A stretch of 64,000 bases of DNA from Anaeramoeba ignava BMAN (Eukaryota; Protista; Anaeramoebae): the NCBI GenBank assembly GCA_028826165.1, contig JAPDFW010000071.1:310001-374000 (forward strand), read 5' to 3'. Numbering within the stretch: position 1 is the first letter of the stretch; each line of letters begins with the position of its first letter. Under the pieces are notes generated by a model, which made no database searches, was not told the DNA's origin, and saw only the letters and a list, made by a program, of their open reading frames with translations. Positions 6,774-63,460 of this stretch are shown here, piece after piece. The position numbers were made by a program, and so were the translations under genes.

Positions 6774-9700
6774 ATGGCAGAGGAATTACTTGATTTTTCA
6801 AAAGAGGCTTTCAATGTCGATTTATTTGATCAAGTTGTTAATACTTTTTATTATGGAACTGGTGAAGAAGTAATAAATCAATTTCTGAATAAAATTAATT
6901 TAAAAATTAATTTAAAAATTAAAATTAAAATCCAAATTCAAATTCAAATTCAAATTAAAATTAAAATTAAAATTAAAATTAAAATTAATATTCATTTAAA
7001 AATCCAAATTAAAATTAAAATTAAAATTAAAATCAAAATTAAAATCCAAATTAAAATCATTTCAAAATTAATATTTAAATTAAAATTAAAATTAAAATTA
7101 AAATTAAAATTAAAAATTAAAATTAAAATTAAAATTAAATTAAAATTCATTTCAAAATCAAAAATTAAAATCAAAATTAAAATTAAAATTAAAATCCAAA
7201 TTAAAATTAAAAATTCATTTCAAATTTAAAATTCATTTAAAAATCATTTCAAATTCATTTAAAATTCATTTAAAATTAAAATTAAAATCCAAATTAAAAT
7301 TAAAATTAAAATTAAAATTAAAATTAAAATTAAAATTAAAATTAAAATTAAAATTAAAATTAAAATTAAAATTAAAATTAAAATTAAAATTAAAATTAAA
7401 ATTAAAATTAAAATTAAAATTTAAAATTAAAATTCATTTAAAAAATCCATTTGAAAAATTAGCAAAATTTAGCTCAAAACTTTCTAACACAATTTCAAGA
7501 ACATCCTGAATCATGGAGAAGAGTTGATGTAATAATTGAATTTAGTCAAAGTAATAACTCAAAATTTTTAGCATTACAAATTCTCGAAAGAACTATTAAA
7601 TATCGATGGAAATCACTTCCTCAAGAACAACAAGATGGAATTAAAGATTATATTTTAAGAGCAATTATGAATTTATCTGAGGATTCTGAAAGATTTCGTG
7701 CAAATAAAATTGTTGTTTCAAAACTTAATCAAAATTTAGTTGAAGTAAATTTTTTTTTATTTGAATTTTTGAAATGAATTTTATTAATATTAATATTAAT
7801 ATTAATAATAATTTTTTTTTTAAGATTGTTAAACAAGATTGGCCAAAAAATTGGTCAACATTTGTTCAAGATATGATTAAAGCTGGTCAAATTAGTCTTT
7901 CAACTTGTGAAAATGTTATGTCAATATTTAAGTTTTTAAGTCAAGAAGTTTTTGATTTTAACAAAGATCAACTTACTACATCAAAAACAACAGAACTTAA
8001 AAATACTTTTCATGATGAAATTTCTAGTATTTTTGAATTTTGTCAATATGTTCTTGAAAATGGTGATGAAAATTCTTTACTTACTGTATTTTTATTTTAT
8101 TATTTTTTCTTTCTAAAAAAAAAAACTAACACGAATTTTTATTTATTTATTTTTGAAAAAAGGCTACTTTAAGTACTTTCTTATCACTTTTAAATTGGAT
8201 TCCTTTAGGATATATTTTCCAAACTAAGATTATAAAACTTTTAACAACTAAAGTAACTTAAAAAAAAAAAACAATTTTTAATTTTTATTTAATTTAAAAT
8301 TTAATTTAAAATTTTTATAAAGTTTTTATCAAATCCAGAAACTTTGGATTTAGCTCTTCAATGTTTAACAGAAATTGCAGGCCTTAAAAGTGAAATTGCT
8401 TTTGATGAAGAATTTATTAATTTGTATCAATTAGCAACACAAACTTTATCCCAACATATCCAACCGACTTCAAATTTTCTTGATATTTATGATCACGGAA
8501 CAGAAAAAGATCGAAATTTTCTAAGAACTCTTTCAATTTTTCTGACAACATTCTTGAAACATCATATCAAGATTCTTGAAAAATCCCCTAAAATTTTACA
8601 AGATGACATCAAAAATTCATTAACAATTATAATTCTTCTCTCAGAAGTATATGATATAGATATGTTTAAAATTTGCTTGGATTATTGGTATTCTTTTGCA
8701 AGTGATTTATTTCACGAAAACAATAGAAACTTCCCAATGTATCGCAATATCCATATCCCGCAACATAATTATTACCACACCAATAGCTATCCCCAATATA
8801 ATAACAGAAACAAAAGCAAAAGAGGAGAATATTACGAGTCTATTCTCTCCAAAGTGAGACTAGTTTTAATTTCCAAAATGGCAAAACCTGAGGAAGTTTT
8901 GGTTGTTGAAGATGATAATGGAGAATTAATTAGAGAATACGCAAAGGATACAGACGCCATCGAATTATACAAATCAATGAGACAGTCATTAGTTCTCCTA
9001 ACCCATTTGAACTACCAAGACACGCAAATAATCATGCTTGAAAAACTCAAAAAAATCAATCCTTACAGTTTTTCATGGAACGATCTTAACACACTTTGCT
9101 GGGCAATCGGTTCCATTTCAGGAGCAATGTCTGGATCAGAAGAAAAAAACTTTTTGGTCAAAGTTATCAAAATGTTATTAAGCTATTGTGAACAAACAAA
9201 AGGAAAAGATAATAAAGCTGTTGTTGCAAGCAACATAATGTATATTGTTGGTCAATATCCAAGATTTCTTAAGACAAATTGGAGTTTCTTAAAAACTGTT
9301 GCAATGAAATTGTTTGAATTTATGCATGAACCTCATCCAGGAATTAAAGATATGTCTTTGCATCATGACCAAAAAGTTATCATAAGAATCAACAATTCTC
9401 ACACTGTTGTTGATTCTATTGGAAACATTATTGATAAGTTAATGAACCAAAACGAAAATATTCAAAAATTTGGAGATTCTTCGGTTCTTTTCCCAAATCA
9501 AAAATTCGAAATTTTAACTGTTAATGAAAATGAAAAGGTGGATTGGAAACCTATTACAGCTTTTTCTCGCCATAAAACTTCTCAAAAATTAATCAAAGTT
9601 TCAACAAAAACTAAAAGATCAACAATTGCCACAAAAAATCACTCTTTTTTACTTCGTGATAAATCTTCTTTAAAACCAATTTTAGGAAGCAATTTAAAAG

Positions 9701-12700
9701 CAAATATCGATAGAATTCCTCTTTTGAAAAAATTGATAATTCCTGATTCCTACTTAATAAAATATGTAGATTTTAATTCAAATTCAAACCAAAATCTTAT
9801 TGAACTTGATTTTCCTCTTGGATTTTTATTTGGAGCTTATTTTAATATTGGCAAAATTGAAGAGAATAAAAATTCCTTAATTTACCAATCTCAACAAAAT
9901 CCAAATTTACTTAAATATTTACAATCATTAATTCAATTCAAATTTGATATTCCAAATTTACAAACAAGTAACTCTTCGACTTCACTGAAAATACTATTCA
10001 AACCTTTAATCAATTTTATTGATCATTTCTCCTCTAAATTTTTCAATTCAATTAATGAGGATAATATTATAAATGAGAAACTAAAATATCCATCATCTTT
10101 GTTCTCTTTGTTGTTATTCTCTCCTTTGAATTTTTTATCAGGATTTTTCAGTGGATTTTATCATTCAAATCAAAATCAAAATCAAAATGTAAATTTAAAT
10201 CAAGAAATTAATATTGAAATTGTTAATGAATCTTTTGATTTTTCTGAAATGCTCCAAATGATTCTTACTCGTTTTAATATTTTATCTCAAATTTCAGACA
10301 AAAATTATTTTGGTTTGAAGATTATTGGAAAAAATTCAATAAGATTTTTGGAAATGATCAAATTAAATCATTTTGTAGATAATGATTTTGAATATACAAA
10401 TTATATGAATGATTTAATTAATTCCAAAATCTTAACAACTTCTAAATTAAATTTACAAGAAGAAACTGAAATTTATAATCAAATACCTTTCAATAATGAA
10501 CAAGAAGTTGCACCTTCATTTTATCTCAAATCAAATAAAAAGGAAGCCAATTCTTTTGGTTCTTCATTAGAATCATCCTATTCAACATATGAAATGAAAT
10601 CTAAATTGATTGAAATGGAAAAAGAATTGGAGCAAATTTCACAAGAATCAAAAAATATTTTAAATCATTTAGAAAATACAAATAACAACAAAAATTGGAA
10701 AATTGATGAAATTGAAAAAGAATACAAGCAAACGAAAGAATATTTGATTAAAAAAATAGGAGAATTGAAACAAGCATTAAACGCAGATGTTTTTTATGAT
10801 TTGATAACAGACATCCAAGAAGTATCGCTTGGAGATGGAGAATATGTTTATGATTTTAGTGTAGAAAGCAACGAAACATTCATGTTATTTAACACAATAT
10901 TTGTTCACAATTCGTGTGATACTTTTTTAAAAATAGCAACAAAATGCAAACTCCAATTTTCTAAAAAGCAAGATGGAGAATCAGACACGTTTGTGGAAGA
11001 TACAATATCAAAACTAAACTTAATAACATCGGATCTTGAAAATCAACAAGTTCTTACATTTTACGAAGCATTGGGAATAATAATTTCTTCAGCAAGAAAA
11101 AGTGAAAAAGAAAAACTTGTTGAAAAATTAATGAATCATCACAACACATCCTGGTCACAATTACTTTCATTATCAAAAAGCGATGAAAACACACTGAATA
11201 ATATTCAGATATGCAAGGATTTGGTCTATATTTTGAGAGCTAATGTGCGAACTTCATCAACAGTTGGAGGAGCTTTTATCCAACAATTCAATTTTATTTA
11301 TGAAGATGCATTATTTCTTTACAAAGCGTTTTCTGTTTTGATCAAGAAAATAATATCATCCGAAGGAACTCAAATTGTGAAAAGTAATCAAATAAGAAAC
11401 ATGAAGGCTGTTAAGAAGGAAATTATCATTTTGATTCAAACTTTTTTCCAAAAATGTGAAGATCCTCAACCTTTAATGGAAGAATTTTTCCCTCGTTTAT
11501 TTGAAGTTATTTTTGATGATTACAAGAATAATTTTCCTGAAGCAAGAATTCCAGAATTGCTTCTTTTCTTATCAATTGTTATTTCTATTCTTCAAACTCA
11601 AATTATTAGTTATATTCCTTCCATTTTTGAATCAACATTTGAATGCACATTAGAAATGATTTCATCAAATTTTGAAGATTTTCCTGATTTTAGATTTAAT
11701 TTTTATAAGTTACTTGAATCAATTAATAAGTTTTCTTTTGATTCTTTATTCATGCTTACTTCACAAAATTTTAAGGTTATTGTTGATAGTATTATTTGGG
11801 CTTTTAAACATACAGAAAGAAATATATCCGAAACTGGATTATCTATTTTATTAGATTTATTTCGTAATGTTTTATTACGTGATGAAATTTTGAATGATTT
11901 TTTCCAAACATTTTATCTATCACTTATTCAAGAAATATTTAATATTTTAACTGATACTTTCCATAAAACAGGTAAATAATTTTAATTTCAATTAATTTAA
12001 AATTTATTTATAAAATTAAATATAAAATTAAATATAAAATTAAATATAAAATTTTTAATTTATAAAATTAAATATAAAATTAAAATATAAAATTAATTAT
12101 AAATTAATTTAAAATTATTTATAAAATTATTTAATAAATTAAATATAAAATTAAATATAAAATTAATTATAAAATTATATATAAAATTATTTATAAAATT
12201 AATTATAAAATTAAAAATAAAATTATTTATAAAATTAAATATAAAATTATATATAAAAATTTATAAAATTTATAAAAATTATAAATATAAAAAATTATTT
12301 ATAAAAATTTTAAAAATAAAATTTAAATATAAAATTATAAATAAAATTATTTATAAAATTATTTATAAAATTAAAATAGGATTTGCTTTATAAGCAGAAA
12401 TTCTTCAATCAATGATTCAAATGGTTAGTTTAAATAAAATTCAAACACCATTATTCAATGTTGCAACAGAATATCAACAAAATGAGCATTATCTTAAATT
12501 GTATTTATTAGAAATGTTAGCAGCAATGTTTCCACATTTAAATCAACCACAAATTGAAAATTTTATTGCAGGAATGTTTGAACTTAATAAAGATTTACCA
12601 AACTTTAAAAATCATTTAAGAGATTTTCTTATTCAATTAAAAGAATTTACAGGTCAAGATAATACTGATTTATTTGAAGAAGAAAAACAACTTCAAAAAC

Positions 12701-12917: not shown

Positions 12918-15114
12918 ATGAGAAAGATTTTAAAAGCAAATAATGTTGAAAATTTGGTTATTGAATCTTCAAAAATAAAAGTAAATTTTAAATTAAAATT
13001 AAAATAAAAATTAAAAATTAAAATTAAAATTAAAATAAAAAGCCAAATACAATTATTAAAGCTATTCAAGAAAATTGTTCAATTCCAATATTTCAAACTC
13101 TTCTTGATCATGGAAATAAATTAGATTATAAAACTGTAATCAAAATTAAAATAATATTTTTATATAAAGACTTTTTATTATTAATTTAAATTAATTAAAA
13201 TTTTTAGCAAGTAAAATTAAGTTTTTTTTAAAAAAAGAAATAAATTTATTATTAATTTAAATTAAAGTATGGGGAAAGTATAATTGAATTTGCATGTAAA
13301 CATAAACTAGATATAGAAAAAATTCGTTTTTTAATTAAACAAGGAGCACCTGTTAATACTCAAAATGTTTAAAACAAAATCAAAATCAAAATCAAATAAT
13401 TTCCTTTTTTATTTTTTAATAAAAAATAATTTAAATTTATTTAGATTGTATAAATTCAATTTTATATCCTTTTTATTTTAAATTTTATTTATTCATTTTA
13501 AAAAACAAAAAACAAATGATTCTAATTTTATTTAGTGGGTTTTTTTTTTAAAAAATTTTAAATTAAAGTTTATTTAGTTTATTTTTATCATTTTTATCAT
13601 TTTTATCATTTTAGAAAGATACTCCTTTACATTTTGCATGTTTTTATCCAGGAAATTTTCCTTTAATTGATTTATTATTAAATGAAACTATTGATATTAA
13701 TTCAAAAGGAGTTTGAATTTAAAACTAAAATCAATTATTTTTAAAGAAAGGATTTATTTAGAAAATTTTTTAGAATGTAAATTTGAATTTTAATTTTATA
13801 AATGAATTTGAATTTTAATTTTAATTTTAATTTGAATTTTAATTTTAATTTTAATTTTAATTTTAATTTTAATTTCAAAATGAATTTTAATTTTTAAATT
13901 TAATTTTAATTTTAATTTTAATTTTAATTTTAATTTTAATTGAAAAGATGGTAATTTTAATACTTTAAACAAAAATAATCTAGAATTATAATAACAATAA
14001 TAATTATAGGGAAATACACCTTTACATAATTGCGCATATTTTGAATGTGGAATTGATAAATTTATATATTTAATATCAAAAGGAGCTGATCCTAATATTA
14101 TGAATGTTTGTGAATAAAAAATCAACAAAAAAAACAATAAATAGTTTTGATTTTAAAACAAAATATTTTTTTAGAAAGTAAAATAGAAAGAAATAATTTT
14201 TAATTTTAATCTTCATTCTAAATTTTTATTTTTCATTCCAAAAAAAAACAAAGAAAGTAAAATTAAAATTAAAATTAAAAATTAAAAGTAAAATTAAAAT
14301 TAAAATAAAAATTAAAATTAAAATTAAAATTAAAATTAAAATTAAAATTAAAATTAAAATTAAAATTAAAATTAAAATTAAAATTAAAATTAAAATTAAA
14401 ATTTAAAATTTAAAATTAAAGGGACAAAAACCAATTGATTTGGTTCAAAAAAAAGAATCATTCGAATTTTTTTTTAAATGTGAAAGTTTATTTAATGATT
14501 TTCGAATATTATTTGAAAAACAAGAAGTTATTGATATTAAATTTGAATTAAATGATGGAGAAATTGGAGCACATAAAACAATTTTAGCAGCAAAAATTGG
14601 AGAAGAAAACATTGAAAAATTCAAAAATTCACTAAAAACAAAAGTACTTAAATTTGCGAAGAAAATTCTATATTTGATTTATTTTGGAATAAGTTTAGAA
14701 GAAGATATTCCACAATTAAAATTGTTTTTTGAACAAACAAAGTTTTTAAAATTTGAAAATTTTTTTGGATTTGAAAAATTTTTCGAACTTATGGATCAAT
14801 TATATCAATCGGAAAAAACAAAAAATTTTACAATTTTGGTTGGATCAAATGAGATTAAAGTTCATAGAGTTGTTCTTTCTGCAAGAAGTGAACTTTATAA
14901 AGGAATGTTTATGAACGTTAATGATGACAGCAATAAAGTTAATGATTATAGTGGAAATTCTTTTAAAAGTTTTGAACAATTGATCCACTTTTTTTATTTG
15001 AACCAAATAGATCCAAAATGTCCAAAAAAAGTTATACAAGAATTAACTGATTCAGTTGAATATTATCAAGTGAGAAAATTGAAAGAACAAATTGAATTTC
15101 AATTTAAAAAATGA
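12918..15114 (+). CDS. Ankyrin-repeat + tandem BTB/POZ protein with seven 3-nt micro-exons (13 exons)
   Basis: Exons: 12918-12980, 13043-13135, [13208-13210 Q], 13268-13366, [13445-13447 I], [13536-13538 W], 13615-13710, [13774-13776 N], [13948-13950 M], 14010-14105, [14175-14177 K], [14254-14256 K], 14422-15114. Splicing gives LDYKT-Q-YGESIIEFAC, VNTQN-I-W-KDTPLHFAC, INSKG-N-M-GNTPLHNCA and PNIMN-K-K-GQKPIDL. BTB motifs are IGAHKTIL and IKVHRVVLSARSELYKGMF. Confidence 0.88.
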
Positions 15115-58512: not shown

Positions 58513-61500
58513 TTAAATTTTTATATCCTTCAACAATTTGAAAACTTCTTTAATAGTGGGTCTTTTTTCAGGATCCTTTTGAAAACATTCAGAAATAACA
58601 TGATTCAAAAACCCATTTTCAGGAAGAGGAGGCCTGTCGTTATGAATAACAACTTTCAAAGTGACTTGAGCAACAGTAAAACCTTCAAAAGGTGTTTCTC
58701 TGGATTGAATTTCCCAGAGAATCATACCCAAGGCATATATATCAGCAGGAAAAGAGTACTTTTCGCCTGACATTACTTCAGGCGCCATCCAATTAACAGT
58801 TCCGACAAATGTATTGAGTTGATTTCGAGTTGAATCGATAGTTTTTGACAACCCAAAATCGGTGATTTTTGCATTTTCATTTTTGTCAAGAAGAATATTT
58901 GGAGATTTCAAGTCTCTATGAATGATATTATTGGCATGAAGATACATCACACCTTTTGTAATATCCAAAGAAAACGCCAGTTTTTTCTCGTCAGAAATGG
59001 GAGTCTCAGAATGTAAATAGGAATATAAACTTCCTCCCGAGCAATATTCCATCACAAGTGCCATATTGGGTTCAGTTGTGCAAGACCCGATAAACTGTAC
59101 AATATTTGGATGGCTTAATTTGCTCAACATATTCAATTCGTTATTAAAATCATCAATTTCTTCCTTGCTCATCTGTGGTCCTGTGAGAAGCTTCAGCACA
59201 GCCACATCCAATCCTAGCCATGTTCCATGCCAAACCTCCTTAAAACTTCCCTTTGCGACATAGTTTAAAATCTCGATATCTTCATACACTATTTTTTTCT
59301 CTCCTAATTGCTTGTCTTCTACTTGATTTCCCTTCTCTTTTTCGTTGTCTGATGATTCTGGTTCTAAATCAGAATCAAATTCTAAATCATCTGATTCATT
59401 GCTTTTTTTGTTCTCATTCTCTTTTTGTTCCCGAAAACTATTTTTTAGCTTTTCAAATTCTTCGTCCCTTTGTCGTAATTTCTCAAGCTGTGCTTTAAGT
59501 CGCTGATCTTTGATCTGAAGTTGTCTTTGAAGCTCTTTTAATTGATGCTCTTGTTGTCGTGCTTTGTATTCTGTTTGCTTCAATGATTTGATTTGATTCT
59601 GCATTGCCATCTCTTTTTCTTTTGGAAAATCATCAAAAAATTTTTGCACTTCCTTTGTTGCAAAATCGTATGGCATTTTTCTCTATATTTTCATTTCATT
59701 TCATTTATAAAAATTTTATTACTCTTTAATTATTCAAAAAAAAACAACAACTATTTTTCTGAAATTGAAAATGTTTTAATTTTACATCCTTTAAAAAATT
59801 TTCCAAGAATAATAATATAAATTTAATTTAATTTAATTTAATTTAATTTAATTTAATTTAATTTAATTATATTTAATAATTTTTTTGTTGTTTTTAATAA
59901 TTTTTTTGTTGTTTTTAATCCCTTTATTCTAAAAAATTCCCCAATAATAAAATAAATACATTTTTACAATACATATAAGCTCCAGAATCTAAAAGCAATT
60001 TGATAGTTTCAATCGATAATTTAAAACGACATGCATAATGTAGAGGTGTATTTCCCTTTATATTGATTTAATAAAACAAATTTTTTTTTACTTTCACTTT
60101 TTTTTTTCTAAAAAGAAATAAAATAATATCAATATTTACATTCTATTTATCAAAATAATCAACATAAACACCAAAATTAATTTTTAAATTAATTTATAAA
60201 TCAAAATTAAATTAATTTTACCAACTAAATAATTGATTAATAAAAATTTTCATTTCCCCAAAAAAAAAAATTTGTTTCTTCTTTTTGTGTTTTTTTTTCA
60301 ATTAATAAAATACATCAATAGCTTGAATATTTGCTTTATTTTCTATTAATAATTTAATAATTTCATGATCTGCTCGAGCAATACATGCAGCGTGTAATGG
60401 AGTCAATTGCTATTTTATAATTTTATAATTTTATAATTTTTAATTTTATAATTATTTTTAATTTTATAATAGTTTTTTCTTACATACTAATAAAAATTTA
60501 ATAATCATTTTAATATAAAAAATTTTTCTTTTCAAAAAATGGATAAAATAAAATCAATTACAATCTAAATTAAATTTAGAACAGAAAAATAAATATCAGC
60601 TATAAAAATTTAATTCATATTTTTATTATTACATCTTTTGCTTCTATAAATGCACCTGCTTTTAAAATTTCTTCAATAACATCTGAATTTGTTTGATATT
60701 TGACAGCAAAATGAAGAATAGAATTATTCTACTCATAAAAAATAAAACAGAAAGAAATATTCATATAAAAAATTTTTCTTTTCAAAAAATGGATAAAATA
60801 AAATAAAATAAAATCAATTACAATCTATAATGATTTACAGTAAAAAAAATGAATCAAAATTTCAAATTTTAATTTAATTACTTTCTGTTTTTTTTTTTTA
60901 AAAAGTATAAATATTTTTTTTCTGTTTTTTTTTTTAATTTATAAATCAAACATCAATAGCTTTCAAATCTGGATTTTTGGAAAGGATTAATTTAATAACA
61001 TCTAAAGTAATTGATTTCTTGAATAAAATATGTAACGCAGTTTCTCCCTTTGTTTGTTTTATATATTTTATATTATAAAAAAATCAACATCAATTACTTT
61101 TTATTTCTCAATAAAATAAATAATACAATCTAGAAAAGAAAATAAATTGAATTTATTAATGATAAAAAAAAATTTATAATCATTACTTCCTATAATAATA
61201 AAAAAATAAAAAAATAAAAATAAAAATAAAAATAAAAATAAAAATAAAAATAAAAATAAAATGAAATTATTACAGTTTTGTTATTCACATCTGCTCCAGA
61301 ATCTAAAAAAATTTGAATTAAAGGAATTTTTGGATCATTGGTACAAACCAAATGGAAAGCAGAATACCCTTTCTAATATTTTTTTTTCTTTTATTAATAT
61401 TCTAAATTCTTATTAAAACAAAATGGATCAAAATTACATCCTAAAAAAAAAAGAAAAATTTTTTTATTATTATCAAACAAAACAATTTTTCTTTTGTAAT

Positions 61501-63460
61501 TTTATAAATAAAATAATTTACATTCAAAAGATTTGGGTCTGCTCCACTTTTGAGAAAAAGTTGAACAGAAGCCAAATCAATTGGTTTTTCACAACATAAA
61601 TGCAAAGGTGTAGATCCCTTAATTAAAAAAGAAAAATCAACTTAAATCTAAAAAAAAAGAGGAAGAATAAGAAGAATTATAAAATACATACTAAATAAAA
61701 AAAAAGCATTAATTAAATAAAATATATTAATTAAATCCAAATAAAATTACTTTCTAAAAAATATATCAATTTTAATATTCATGTATAAATATTTATCTAA
61801 TAATAATTTACATTTTTAGCATTAGTATCAGCTCCAGCTTTAATAATATCTTGAAGAATTTCAATTGATGCTTTATCAATGCATGCTAAATGGAGTGGTG
61901 TGTTTAACTATTGAAGAAGAAAAAAAAGGTTATATATTTTCCTTTTGTTTTCAATTCTTTCTTTGAAATAATAAATGGAATAAAATACATCCTAAAAAGA
62001 ATCACAATTTTTTATGAATTTTTGATAATTGAATAAAAAAAACAGAAAAAACCAAAAATGATTTCAAACATTCTAAAAAAAAATTTTTGATGAATATAAA
62101 TGAATAAAAAAAAGGAGAATTTGAATTATTTTGTACATTTGCTAGATTAACATCAGCACCAGAATCAATTAATAATTGGATAATTTCTTCAGTTGGTAAT
62201 TGAAAAAGATTTAATTTTGCAGTTAATTTTTGAACCTGGAAAAATAAAAGCAAAATATATAAATAAATATATATATATTTTTTTGTGTTTTGAAATTTAA
62301 ATTTACATATTGTGTAAGTGCGGTTGTTGCACTTCTTCTAAATAACGGAAGAGTTGAGCAAGCAAAATGTAATGGAGTATTTCCCTAATTATTAGAATAA
62401 TTCCGAAAAAGATTTTTAATTCAATTTATATTCAATTTTTTTTTCTTTCTAAAATTTTAATATCTTTGGTTACATCCTTTTTAAAATATTTTTTTATTTG
62501 GAAGTTTGTAAAAAAATCTTTTCAATTCCATAAAATCAAAAAATTCTTACTTTCTAAATACAAAAGAAAAAATATTTTATCAGAAGAAAAATTGGGTTCA
62601 TTTGATTTATTGTTTACATCTTTGATTTTAGTATCAGCTCCATGTTGAATTAAAGATTTTATGATATCTTTAGATACTTTTGTATAGCAAGCTAAATGGA
62701 AAGGTGTTGTTCCCTTTTTATTTTGTTTATCAAATTAATTTTTTAAATTTTTTAAATTTTTTAAATTTAAATTTTACAGACTTTTTAAAGAAAAAAAAAG
62801 AATAAAAACAAAAGAAAGATTGGTTTTTTTTTTAAATATTCTAAAAAAGGGGAAAAAAATAAAATAATTACGTTCTAAATTTAAAAATTATTTTGAAATC
62901 AAAATAGAAACAAGAATGTAAAAGAAAATTAAAAAGAAAAAAGTTATTGTTTTTAACAAACATTTTGTGCATTTGGATTTGCTCCTGCTTCAATTAAAGA
63001 TTCTACAATTTCTTGGTTATAAAATTGTTGAAATGCATAATGAAGTGGTGTGTTGTTCTATTTTATTTAAAAAAAAAATTATTTATTAAAAATATCTTTA
63101 TTTATTTTTTAAAAAAAATTTTTACTTCCTAAAACATTAATAAATGAACAAAAAGCAATTTTAAACAATAAATATTTTTTTGAAACGTCATGTAAAAAAA
63201 ATTTATAAGAAAAAAAAAAGGAAAAAGAAAGTTGAATTATTTCTAATTTCATACAAGCTATTTTTTTTTAAAAACAAATTAAATTAAATTAAATTAAATT
63301 AAATTAAATGAAATTTCGAAAAATAATTTTAAAATAATTTCTTTTAAATTTATTTTACTCCAAGTTTATTAGCTGATCCTTTTTTACGTAAAAATCCTCC
63401 ACTCAAATATTTTTTTACTGATTTAGAATCTCCTTTTAAAATAGATTTGAAAATTGACAT
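58513..63460 (-). CDS. Ankyrin-repeat (10 repeats) + coiled-coil + TKL-type protein kinase, ~33 exons including twenty 3-nt micro-exons
   Basis: Exon 1 is 63460-63359. Core exons: 63057-62962, 62713-62618, 62384-62307, 62235-62137, 61907-61812, 61617-61522, 61372-61274, 61047-60952, 60728-60633, 60409-60314, 60055-59960. Last exon 59682-58513 has HRDLKSPN, DFG and GTVNWMAPE. Micro-exons are listed in the findings. Confidence 0.88.

What the first reader, a model, noticed from the sequence alone, without database searches (positions are those of the whole stretch)
60513..60827. A micro-exon plus intron cassette copied between hairpin positions: footprint of codon shuffling
Seen: 60513-60567 and 60763-60827 are identical (ATATAAAAAATTTTTCTTTTCAAAAAATGGATAAAATA...AAATCAATTACAATCTA) apart from two extra AAATA units. 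Each contains the acceptor, the Ile (ATT) micro-exon, its donor and ~50 nt of downstream intron, while the flanks and neighbouring core exons are dissimilar. One copy is the second micro-exon of its junction (K-I) and the other is the first (I-Y), so whole-repeat duplication does not explain it. Related TCCATTT-containing intron starts follow the Asp micro-exons at 61438 and 61989. Inference: micro-exon cassettes move by gene conversion, recombination or duplication independently of the repeat, which would give a DNA-level mechanism for swapping single contact residues.
Basis: partly seen in the sequence, partly recalled or inferred. Interest (0 to 1): 0.85.

Follow-up and report, generated by a model that had tools for sequence, protein, structure and literature searches.

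The report
Copied single-codon exon in ankyrin gene
In an ankyrin-kinase gene of the anaerobic amoeba Anaeramoeba ignava, a 3-base exon for isoleucine, its splice signals and about 50 bases of the next intron were copied from one repeat junction onto the neighbouring one, changing a loop-tip residue; a transcript-derived protein shows both copies are spliced into the mRNA.

Summary
Window 60513-60567 and 60763-60827 are identical apart from two extra 5-nt units. They are the only two copies in the 42.8-Mb genome and the best non-repetitive pair among 48,023 cassette pairs.

The gene (minus strand, 63460 to 58516) is the A. ignava ankyrin-kinase KAJ5073982.1. Its public model joins the core exons directly. 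A transcriptome-derived ORF in EukProt (P0179, 792 aa) equals that model plus 21 residues, all at the 11 junctions. Twenty of the 21 match, in order, every ag|NNN|gt triplet in the DNA, including K-I and I-Y. Earlier follow-ups in this scan lacked such RNA-level support, though this is protein-level evidence from one assembled contig.

Paralogs polarise the event. I-Y at the second junction is shared with the C60 paralog. Ile at the first junction replaces the Asn seen in two paralogs. So the cassette most likely moved from junction 9-10 onto junction 8-9 by short-tract intragenic conversion or template switching.

No second cassette-only copy was found among 311 candidate cassettes. A 15-unit tandem cassette array in another gene keeps the idea open.

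Raw reads could not be checked. The scan had already noted this micro-exon layout in other A. ignava genes.

The parts
58516..63460 (-). Ankyrin-repeat protein kinase gene of Anaeramoeba ignava (public model KAJ5073982.1 = P0122, 771 aa; transcript-derived ORF P0179, 792 aa). It has 13 ordinary exons and 21 single-residue insertions at 11 junctions.
   Evidence: P0179 maps exon by exon onto the window.
60763..60827 (-). Copy 2 of the cassette (inferred recipient): acceptor TAG (60825-60827), 3-nt exon ATT (60822-60824, Ile301) and the first 59 nt of the last intron of junction 8-9, including four TTTAT units.
   Evidence: Ile301 is present in P0179. Paralogs have Asn at this place.
60513..60567 (-). 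Copy 1 of the cassette (inferred donor): acceptor TAG (60565-60567), 3-nt exon ATT (60562-60564, Ile334) and the first 49 nt of the middle intron of junction 9-10, including two TTTAT units.
   Evidence: Ile334 is present in P0179. The C60 paralog has ATT-TAT (I-Y) at the same junction.
60882..60884 (-). 3-nt exon AAA (Lys300), first micro-exon of junction 8-9; not part of the copy.
60484..60486 (-). 3-nt exon TAT (Tyr335), second micro-exon of junction 9-10; not part of the copy.
60952..61047 (-). Core ankyrin exon 8 (aa 268-299 of P0179).
   Evidence: 51% nt identity to exon 9.
60633..60728 (-). Core ankyrin exon 9 (aa 302-333), lying between the two copies.
60314..60409 (-). Core ankyrin exon 10 (aa 336-367).
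61438..61440 (-). 3-nt exon GAT (Asp232). Its downstream intron begins gtaattttgatccatttt, possibly an older relative of the cassette.
   Evidence: Weak statistics.
61989..61991 (-). 3-nt exon GAT (Asp165). Its downstream intron carries TCCATTT at +10.
59789..59959 (-). A 171-nt stretch that must hold the codon for Gln402 of the transcript. No ag|CAR|gt is present. The only CAA triplets upstream of the GAT micro-exon are at 59911, 59908, 59890 and 59887, all without AG/GT flanks.
   Evidence: Unexplained.

Best explanation
The two stretches are paralogous pieces of one gene. Each holds a genuine, spliced 3-nt exon (ATT, Ile), its acceptor AG, its donor and the 5' part of the following intron.

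Most likely history: a recent short-tract intragenic (non-allelic) gene conversion, or a replication template switch, copied the cassette of junction 9-10 (first hairpin position) onto junction 8-9 (second hairpin position), about 260 nt upstream on the gene strand. It overwrote an ancestral Asn (AAT) micro-exon. The TTTAT microsatellite inside the tract then changed length by two units.

Because the tract carries the codon with both splice junctions, the recipient junction kept its count of two micro-exons and the 33-residue repeat period. Only the residue changed, Asn to Ile, at the beta-turn tip between repeats 8 and 9.

Shown: the copy exists, it is unique in the genome, and both Ile residues are in the transcript-derived protein. 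Inferred: the direction and the molecular mechanism. It looks like a single event, not a demonstrated general system.
For: Identity and sharp boundaries of the tract.

Only two copies in 42.8 Mb, and no recent paralog with intron-level similarity.

Statistical outlier.

mRNA-level reality of the micro-exons: P0179 equals P0122 plus LE, NS, KD, ND, KY, D, EI, KI, IY, LN, QD at the 11 junctions. In the first ten junctions the ag|NNN|gt triplets in the DNA are exactly those codons, in order, with no extras. In the last junction only D is found.

Including these residues raises the fit to junction-spanning Pfam ankyrin profiles: Ank_4 138.8 to 178.7 bits, Ank_5 98.0 to 138.5 bits.

Polarity from paralogs with the same layout:
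- C60 has K-N then I-Y.
- C87 has K-N then V-N.
- C71 has N-Y then N-Y.
So Ile at junction 8-9 is unique to this gene, while I-Y at junction 9-10 is shared with C60. In the kinase tree the A. ignava paralogs form one clade; this gene, C60 and C87 are unresolved.

Core exons next to the copies are only 48-53% identical.
Against: - Raw DNA or RNA reads could not be examined, so homogenisation during assembly polishing is not excluded.
- The RNA evidence is protein-level, from one assembled transcript contig. A search for independent partial ORFs found none.
- Polarity rests on three paralogs and an unresolved tree. The reverse direction needs the same number of events if I-Y in C60 is convergent.
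- AAT to ATT is also one point mutation, although that would not explain the identical intron.
- One of the 21 transcript residues (Gln402) has no canonical micro-exon in the assembly, so the local assembly or the splicing rules are not fully understood.
Confidence: 0.7

Rival explanations
1. General codon shuffling. Micro-exon cassettes are routinely exchanged among hairpin positions and genes, acting as a DNA-level system for swapping contact residues in the expanded ankyrin family.
For: - This event is one clear instance.
- TCCATTT-bearing intron starts occur in 4 of the 20 located cassettes of this gene and in none of 53 cassettes from other genes.
- The C60 paralog's homologous ATT intron begins gtttgaatccaatt.
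- A tandem array of 15 cassette units, with near-invariant splice flanks and a variable triplet, lies in a TLDc-like gene. Cassettes can therefore multiply as units.
Against: - No other cassette-only copy was found among 311 candidate cassettes in 48,023 pairs.
- The TCCATTT enrichment is marginal, P about 0.02.
- Its pairwise alignments do not exceed the between-gene null.
- Intron divergence would hide old events, so the test only sees recent ones.
Confidence: 0.12
2. Assembly or polishing artefact. Two already similar intron stretches were made identical by mis-mapped reads during polishing, or a piece was duplicated by the assembler.
For: Reads could not be checked. The region is about 82% A+T and rich in microsatellites. 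One transcript residue (Gln402) has no matching micro-exon in the assembly.
Against: - Both Ile codons are required by the transcript-derived ORF at exactly these places.
- The two copies differ in microsatellite length and sit in unique flanks.
- The rest of the gene matches the transcript ORF over 771 of 771 shared residues.
- A polishing artefact would still need pre-existing homology.
Confidence: 0.07
3. The identity is kept by selection on an intronic element, such as a splicing enhancer or small RNA needed for the ATT micro-exon, and is not a recent copy.
For: Both copies follow the same codon and donor. An ATCCA-like motif also occurs in the C60 paralog's homologous intron.
Against: - No Rfam match.
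- The cassette folds no better than shuffled sequence, z = +1.2 and +2.2.
- The motif is absent from 53 cassettes of other micro-exon genes and from the third ATT micro-exon of this gene at 61127-61129.
- Perfect identity over 49 AT-rich intron bases, with abrupt ends, is typical of a copy and not of constraint.
Confidence: 0.06
4. Leftover of a whole-repeat tandem duplication, or insertion of a mobile intron (introner-like element).
For: The ankyrin array itself must have grown by unit duplication, since all junctions share the same three intron positions.
Against: - Adjacent core exons are 48-53% identical.
- The copies occupy different registers, second versus first micro-exon.
- The shared block begins 6 nt before the donor and ends in mid-intron, so it is not a whole intron.
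- Only two copies exist genome-wide.
Confidence: 0.04

Closest known systems
Ultra-short micro-exons (1-15 nt) of plants and animals, commonly missed by annotation (PMC8831610, PMC8042270, PMC7821500)
   Same: These are 3-nt exons with canonical AG/GT flanks. They are in frame, lie inside a conserved domain, and are missing from the public gene model built from standard RNA-seq mapping (HISAT2, PMC11550330).
   Different: Here 21 single residues are inserted in one gene, mostly as pairs at every repeat junction, and all are included in the one assembled transcript. No paper in the searched library mentions micro-exons in Anaeramoeba.
Non-allelic (intragenic) short-tract gene conversion or template-switch duplication between repeated gene segments
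   Same: A short tract of perfect identity with sharp ends lies inside old, diverged flanks. Donor and recipient are about 260 nt apart in the same gene. A later microsatellite length change is typical of such tracts.
   Different: The tract is only 55-65 nt and lies between non-homologous registers. Its coding payload is a single codon carried with both of its splice junctions.
Micro-exon genes (MEGs) of Schistosoma
   Same: Many tiny symmetric exons sit in one gene and could in principle vary a protein surface.
   Different: MEG exons are 6-36 nt, encode secreted proteins and are alternatively spliced. Here the exons are 3 nt, sit in an intracellular ankyrin-kinase, and alternative use is not shown.
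Designed ankyrin repeat proteins (DARPins), randomised positions 2 and 3 of the beta-turn
   Same: The two micro-exon residues lie between the conserved Asp/Asn that ends each core exon and the Gly-x-Thr-Pro-Leu-His that starts the next. That is the beta-turn tip, which is varied in DARPin libraries.
   Different: This is a positional analogy only. No binding partner or structure was examined here.
Introner-like elements (mobile introns of algae, fungi and dinoflagellates)
   Same: Intron sequence appears in near-identical copies.
   Different: There are only two copies. The copy is not a complete intron and it includes an exon. No terminal repeats or target-site duplications were seen.

Membership tests
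Spliced 3-nt micro-exon | AG immediately upstream and GT immediately downstream of the triplet, within an intron-sized gap | tested here: met
   Both ATT triplets read tag|ATT|gtaatt. The flanking introns are 57 and 93 nt (junction 8-9) and 68 and 75 nt (junction 9-10).
Spliced 3-nt micro-exon | The encoded residue is present in the mRNA product at the predicted place | tested here: met
   P0179 (EukProt transcriptome ORF, TransDecoder-style header) has K300-I301 and I334-Y335. Twenty of its 21 extra residues match the DNA triplets.
Spliced 3-nt micro-exon | Read-level junction evidence from RNA-seq | not testable with these tools
No independent partial ORF was found and no encoding contig for P0179 is on record.
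Short-tract gene conversion or local duplication | A high-identity tract with sharp ends inside diverged flanks | tested here: met
   55 of 55 positions identical plus a 10-nt microsatellite indel. Flanks are at background similarity and core exons 48-53% identical.
Short-tract gene conversion or local duplication | Donor and recipient can be told apart by an outgroup | tested here: inconclusive
   Paralogs C60 and C87 have Asn, and C71 has Tyr, where this gene has the copied Ile. C60 shares I-Y at the donor junction. The tree leaves this gene, C60 and C87 unresolved.
Short-tract gene conversion or local duplication | Both copies present in raw reads | not testable with these tools
Whole-repeat tandem duplication | Neighbouring core exons share the identity of the copied intron, in the same register | tested here: not met
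   Core exons are 48-53% identical. The copies are the second versus the first micro-exon of their junctions.
Introner-like mobile intron | Many dispersed copies, each a complete intron | tested here: not met
   Two copies in 42.8 Mb. The block starts before the donor and ends in mid-intron.
Structured or known RNA element | An Rfam match, or folding better than shuffled sequence | tested here: not met
   No Rfam match at E <= 1. Fold z-scores are +1.23 and +2.19.

The most novel reading that the evidence does not exclude
In A. ignava, single-codon exons with their own splice signals act as portable cassettes. They can be converted between positions or amplified in tandem, so the beta-turn tips of ankyrin repeats, and loops of other domains, evolve by exchanging or adding one residue at a time at the DNA level. 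The event here would then be the freshest visible case of a recurrent process, possibly combined with optional inclusion at the RNA level.
Probability: 0.12. Interest if true: 0.9.

Novelty: new variant of a known kind. Interest (0 to 1): 0.68.

Why it matters
A transcript-derived protein now supports an extreme gene layout: 21 single residues added at the junctions of one gene, 20 of them traced to separate 3-nt exons. They sit where ankyrin repeats usually contact their partners, and the public annotation lacks them. If the layout is as widespread as the pattern counts suggest, annotated ankyrin proteins of this genome are two residues short at many repeat junctions.

The copied cassette shows that such an exon can be moved together with its splice junctions and still be spliced. 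This gives a dated, polarised example of how one surface residue can be replaced without touching the repeat scaffold. It also bears on how 3-nt exons are recognised in an intron-definition organism with about 92% A+T introns. With raw reads it would become directly testable whether inclusion is constitutive or optional.

Tried and rejected
The genome-wide test was therefore limited to loci delivered by the genome search, about 163 kb.
- The look-up of encoding contigs has no record for P0123 or P0179.
- A search for independent partial ORFs covering aa 233-404 of P0179 found only distant ankyrin proteins.
- The other 22-mer near-matches in the genome are AAAAAATGG start-codon contexts, unrelated to the cassette.
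- Rfam and folding gave nothing.
- A whole-gene DNA search gave only microsatellite matches elsewhere.
- The A. flamelloides homolog P0007 encodes its ankyrin repeats in one exon with no micro-exons, so it gave no outgroup for the cassettes.
- The codon for Gln402 could not be placed with canonical splice sites.
- The representative search for the TLDc-like gene returned only paralogs at up to 72% identity, not that gene's own product, so its 15-unit array remains unverified.
- I built and searched no joined spliced model of my own. All full-length comparisons used database proteins P0179 and P0122, and exons were handled by reference.

Full report
**What is there.** The window is about 80% A+T. 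By its proteins it belongs to Anaeramoeba ignava and corresponds to G000:C72:310001-374000. On the minus strand, from 63460 to 58516, lies an ankyrin-repeat protein kinase gene. Its ankyrin part is cut into core exons of about 96 nt. Each runs from the Gly/x-Thr-Pro-Leu-His start of a repeat to the Asp/Asn after Gly-Ala-Asp-x-Asn. The public model (KAJ5073982.1 = P0122, 771 aa) joins these core exons directly, giving repeats two residues shorter than the 33-residue consensus.

**The micro-exons are real.** The 90%-identity cluster of P0122 holds a second member, P0179. It is EukProt entry EP01156_Anaeramoeba_ignava_P006249, 792 aa, with a TransDecoder-style header for contig a348135_112 marked "ORF type:complete". 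I read that as a transcriptome-derived ORF; this comes from the header, not from a record of the data source.

P0179 is identical to P0122 over all 771 shared residues. It carries 21 extra residues, all at the 11 junctions: LE, NS, KD, ND, KY, D, EI, KI, IY, LN, QD.

I then listed every AG-NNN-GT in each gap of the genomic sequence. In the first ten junctions these triplets are exactly the codons for the extra residues, in the right order, with no additional sites. In the last junction only D is found. So 20 of 21 residues are explained by 3-nt exons with strong flanks (mostly tag|NNN|gtaa). The introns around them are 57-126 nt.

Adding the residues improves the fit to Pfam ankyrin profiles that span repeat junctions. 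Ank_4 rises from 138.8 to 178.7 bits and Ank_5 from 98.0 to 138.5 bits.

Earlier follow-ups of this layout in the same genome said RNA proof was missing. This is protein-level evidence from one assembled transcript contig. The genome paper mapped RNA-seq with HISAT2 (PMC11550330); I infer, without having tested it, that this contributed to the annotation missing the 3-nt exons. No paper in the searched library links Anaeramoeba with micro-exons.

**The observation.** On the gene strand the two stretches each read TAG, ATT, then the start of the next intron.
- Copy 2 (60763-60827) is the second micro-exon of junction 8-9 (Lys300-Ile301).
- Copy 1 (60513-60567) is the first micro-exon of junction 9-10 (Ile334-Tyr335).

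They are identical at all 55 shared positions and differ by two TTTAT units. Identity ends abruptly on both sides. The core exons next to them are 48-53% identical at the DNA level, like any other pair of repeats in the gene.

The downstream-intron alignment score is 61.7, against a null of cassettes from other genes with mean 13.6, sd 3.1 and maximum 25.7. In a larger sample it is the top non-repetitive pair among 311 candidate cassettes from about 163 kb of micro-exon-rich loci, 48,023 pairs in all.

The genome holds only these two copies. The other near-matches to a 22-mer from the cassette are start-codon contexts. A DNA search with the whole ankyrin part found only microsatellite matches elsewhere.

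**Direction of the copy.** Four paralogs in the same genome have the same layout upstream of their kinase exon. Counting back from the kinase exon, and using repeat signatures such as LHYAC(R/K)F in the last repeat, the homologous junctions read as follows.

| Gene | Junction 8-9 | Junction 9-10 | Junction 10-11 | Junction 11-kinase |
|---|---|---|---|---|
| This gene | K-I | I-Y | L-N | Q-D |
| C60 | K-N | I-Y | R-N | K only |
| C87 (P0123) | K-N | V-N | L-N | K-D |
| C71 | N-Y | N-Y | M-K | D-D |
| C103 | not covered | N-Y | M-S | T-N |

Ile at the second place of junction 8-9 is therefore unique to this gene. I-Y at junction 9-10 is shared with C60. The kinase tree places all A. ignava paralogs in one clade, with C71+C103 as sisters and the other three unresolved.

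The most parsimonious reading is that the junction 9-10 cassette is the donor. It overwrote an Asn (AAT) cassette at junction 8-9. This is inference from three informative paralogs. I give the direction about 75% and the event itself about 90%.

**Mechanism.** Three facts constrain it:
- the tract is short with sharp ends;
- it moved between non-homologous registers about 260 nt apart;
- the recipient junction kept exactly two micro-exons.

These fit short-tract intragenic gene conversion or a replication template switch, followed by microsatellite slippage. They do not fit the alternatives:
- Whole-repeat duplication: the core exons are diverged and the registers differ.
- A mobile intron: there are only two copies, the block is not a complete intron, and it includes an exon.
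- A structured RNA element: no Rfam match, and it folds no better than shuffled sequence.

An assembly or polishing artefact cannot be excluded without reads. It is unlikely, because both Ile codons are demanded by the transcript ORF and the copies differ in repeat length within unique flanks.

How a 3-nt exon is spliced is not shown here. By inference, the spliceosome cannot occupy both splice sites of a 3-nt exon at once, so the flanking short introns must be removed one after the other.

**Is it a general mechanism?** Evidence for generality is thin. TCCATTT follows four of the 20 located micro-exons of this gene (the two copies plus the Asp exons at 61438 and 61989) and none of 53 cassettes from other genes. 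That suggests older within-gene relatives. But the motif is not rare in the window, giving P about 0.02 for three independent hits. The pairwise scores do not exceed the between-gene null. No other cassette-only copy turned up. Intron divergence would erase old events, so only recent ones can be seen.

One side observation keeps the idea alive. In a TLDc-like gene (G000:C1, locus L052) there are 15 tandem units of 53-112 nt. Each has a nearly invariant ...ttattaaaatag|NNN|gtaaataa frame and a variable triplet. Paralogs of that gene have linkers of 1-8 residues at exactly that place. Whether those triplets are spliced in is unknown.

**Scale of the layout.** A strict pattern for two micro-exons 45-75 nt apart has 220 genomic matches, against 94 for the reversed control. 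Only 2 of this gene's 10 double junctions fit that strict pattern, so the true number is likely several-fold higher. The window holds a second gene of this type, an ankyrin-BTB gene at about 13034-15114 on the plus strand. The homologous ankyrin-kinase of A. flamelloides (P0007) encodes its repeats in one exon. Most ankyrin repeats of A. ignava also lie in long open frames. The layout therefore marks a subset of genes.

**Unexplained.** Gln402 of the transcript has no ag|CAR|gt in the 171-nt stretch 59789-59959, which is about twice the usual intron length. The only CAA triplets upstream of the GAT micro-exon lie in a 21-nt tandem duplication without AG/GT flanks. The cause could be a local assembly error or non-canonical splicing. 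Reads would decide.

**Limits and rules followed.** I built and searched no joined spliced model of my own. Full-length comparisons used database proteins only, and exons were handled by reference. The reads tools could not be used. 

**Verdict.** It is a new variant of known kinds (micro-exons and short-tract conversion), sitting in a gene layout that appears undescribed.

Noticed in passing
window 13034-15114 (+): A second micro-exon-type gene, ankyrin-BTB. It has four core ankyrin exons with ag|NNN|gt triplets at 13208 (CAA), 13445 (ATT), 13536 (TGG), 13774 (AAT), 13948 (ATG), 14175 (AAA) and 14254 (AAA), followed by a BTB exon from about 14420.
   Followed up: partly
L052 = G000:C1:1070820-1073894, minus strand, C1:1072087-1073171: A tandem array of 15 units (53-112 nt) inside a TLDc-like gene. 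Each unit reads ...ttattaaaatag|NNN|gtaaataa, with near-invariant flanks and a variable triplet. The flanking introns are phase 1. Including all 15 triplets would insert about 15 residues, and skipping them gives a normal domain. Paralogs have 1-8-residue linkers at this place. No RNA check was possible.
   Followed up: partly
window 59789-59959 (-): The transcript ORF has Gln402 here, but the assembly shows no canonical 3-nt exon for it. The only CAA triplets sit in a 21-nt tandem duplication without AG/GT flanks.
   Followed up: partly
The transcript ORF P0179 runs from the ATG at 63460 to the kinase stop at 58516, so it is the 5' part of the same gene.
   Followed up: yes
window 8344-11979 (+): The exportin-1 (CRM1)-like ORF carries what looks, from reading the ORF, like an intein: it begins after ...GIKDM and ends ...VHN before SCDTFLKI. 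That fits the many inteins reported for Anaeramoeba (PMC10710043). I ran no intein search.
   Followed up: no
G000:C60:118861-119143 and G000:C2:7158-7366: Runs of four to five consecutive ag|NNN|gtaa triplets spaced 60-70 nt apart, meaning stretches apparently encoded one codon per exon.
   Followed up: no
G000:C67:404492-404568 and 404950-405026: Two near-identical double micro-exon junctions (CGA ... GGA) 458 nt apart. This could be a whole-unit tandem duplication or another cassette copy. The locus was not fetched.
   Followed up: no
L043 (A. flamelloides JAOAOG010000158.1:1553928-1563183): The homologous ankyrin-kinase gene (P0007) encodes all its ankyrin repeats in one 840-nt exon and has a single 5.4-kb intron. 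The micro-exon layout is therefore not shared by this homolog.
   Followed up: yes
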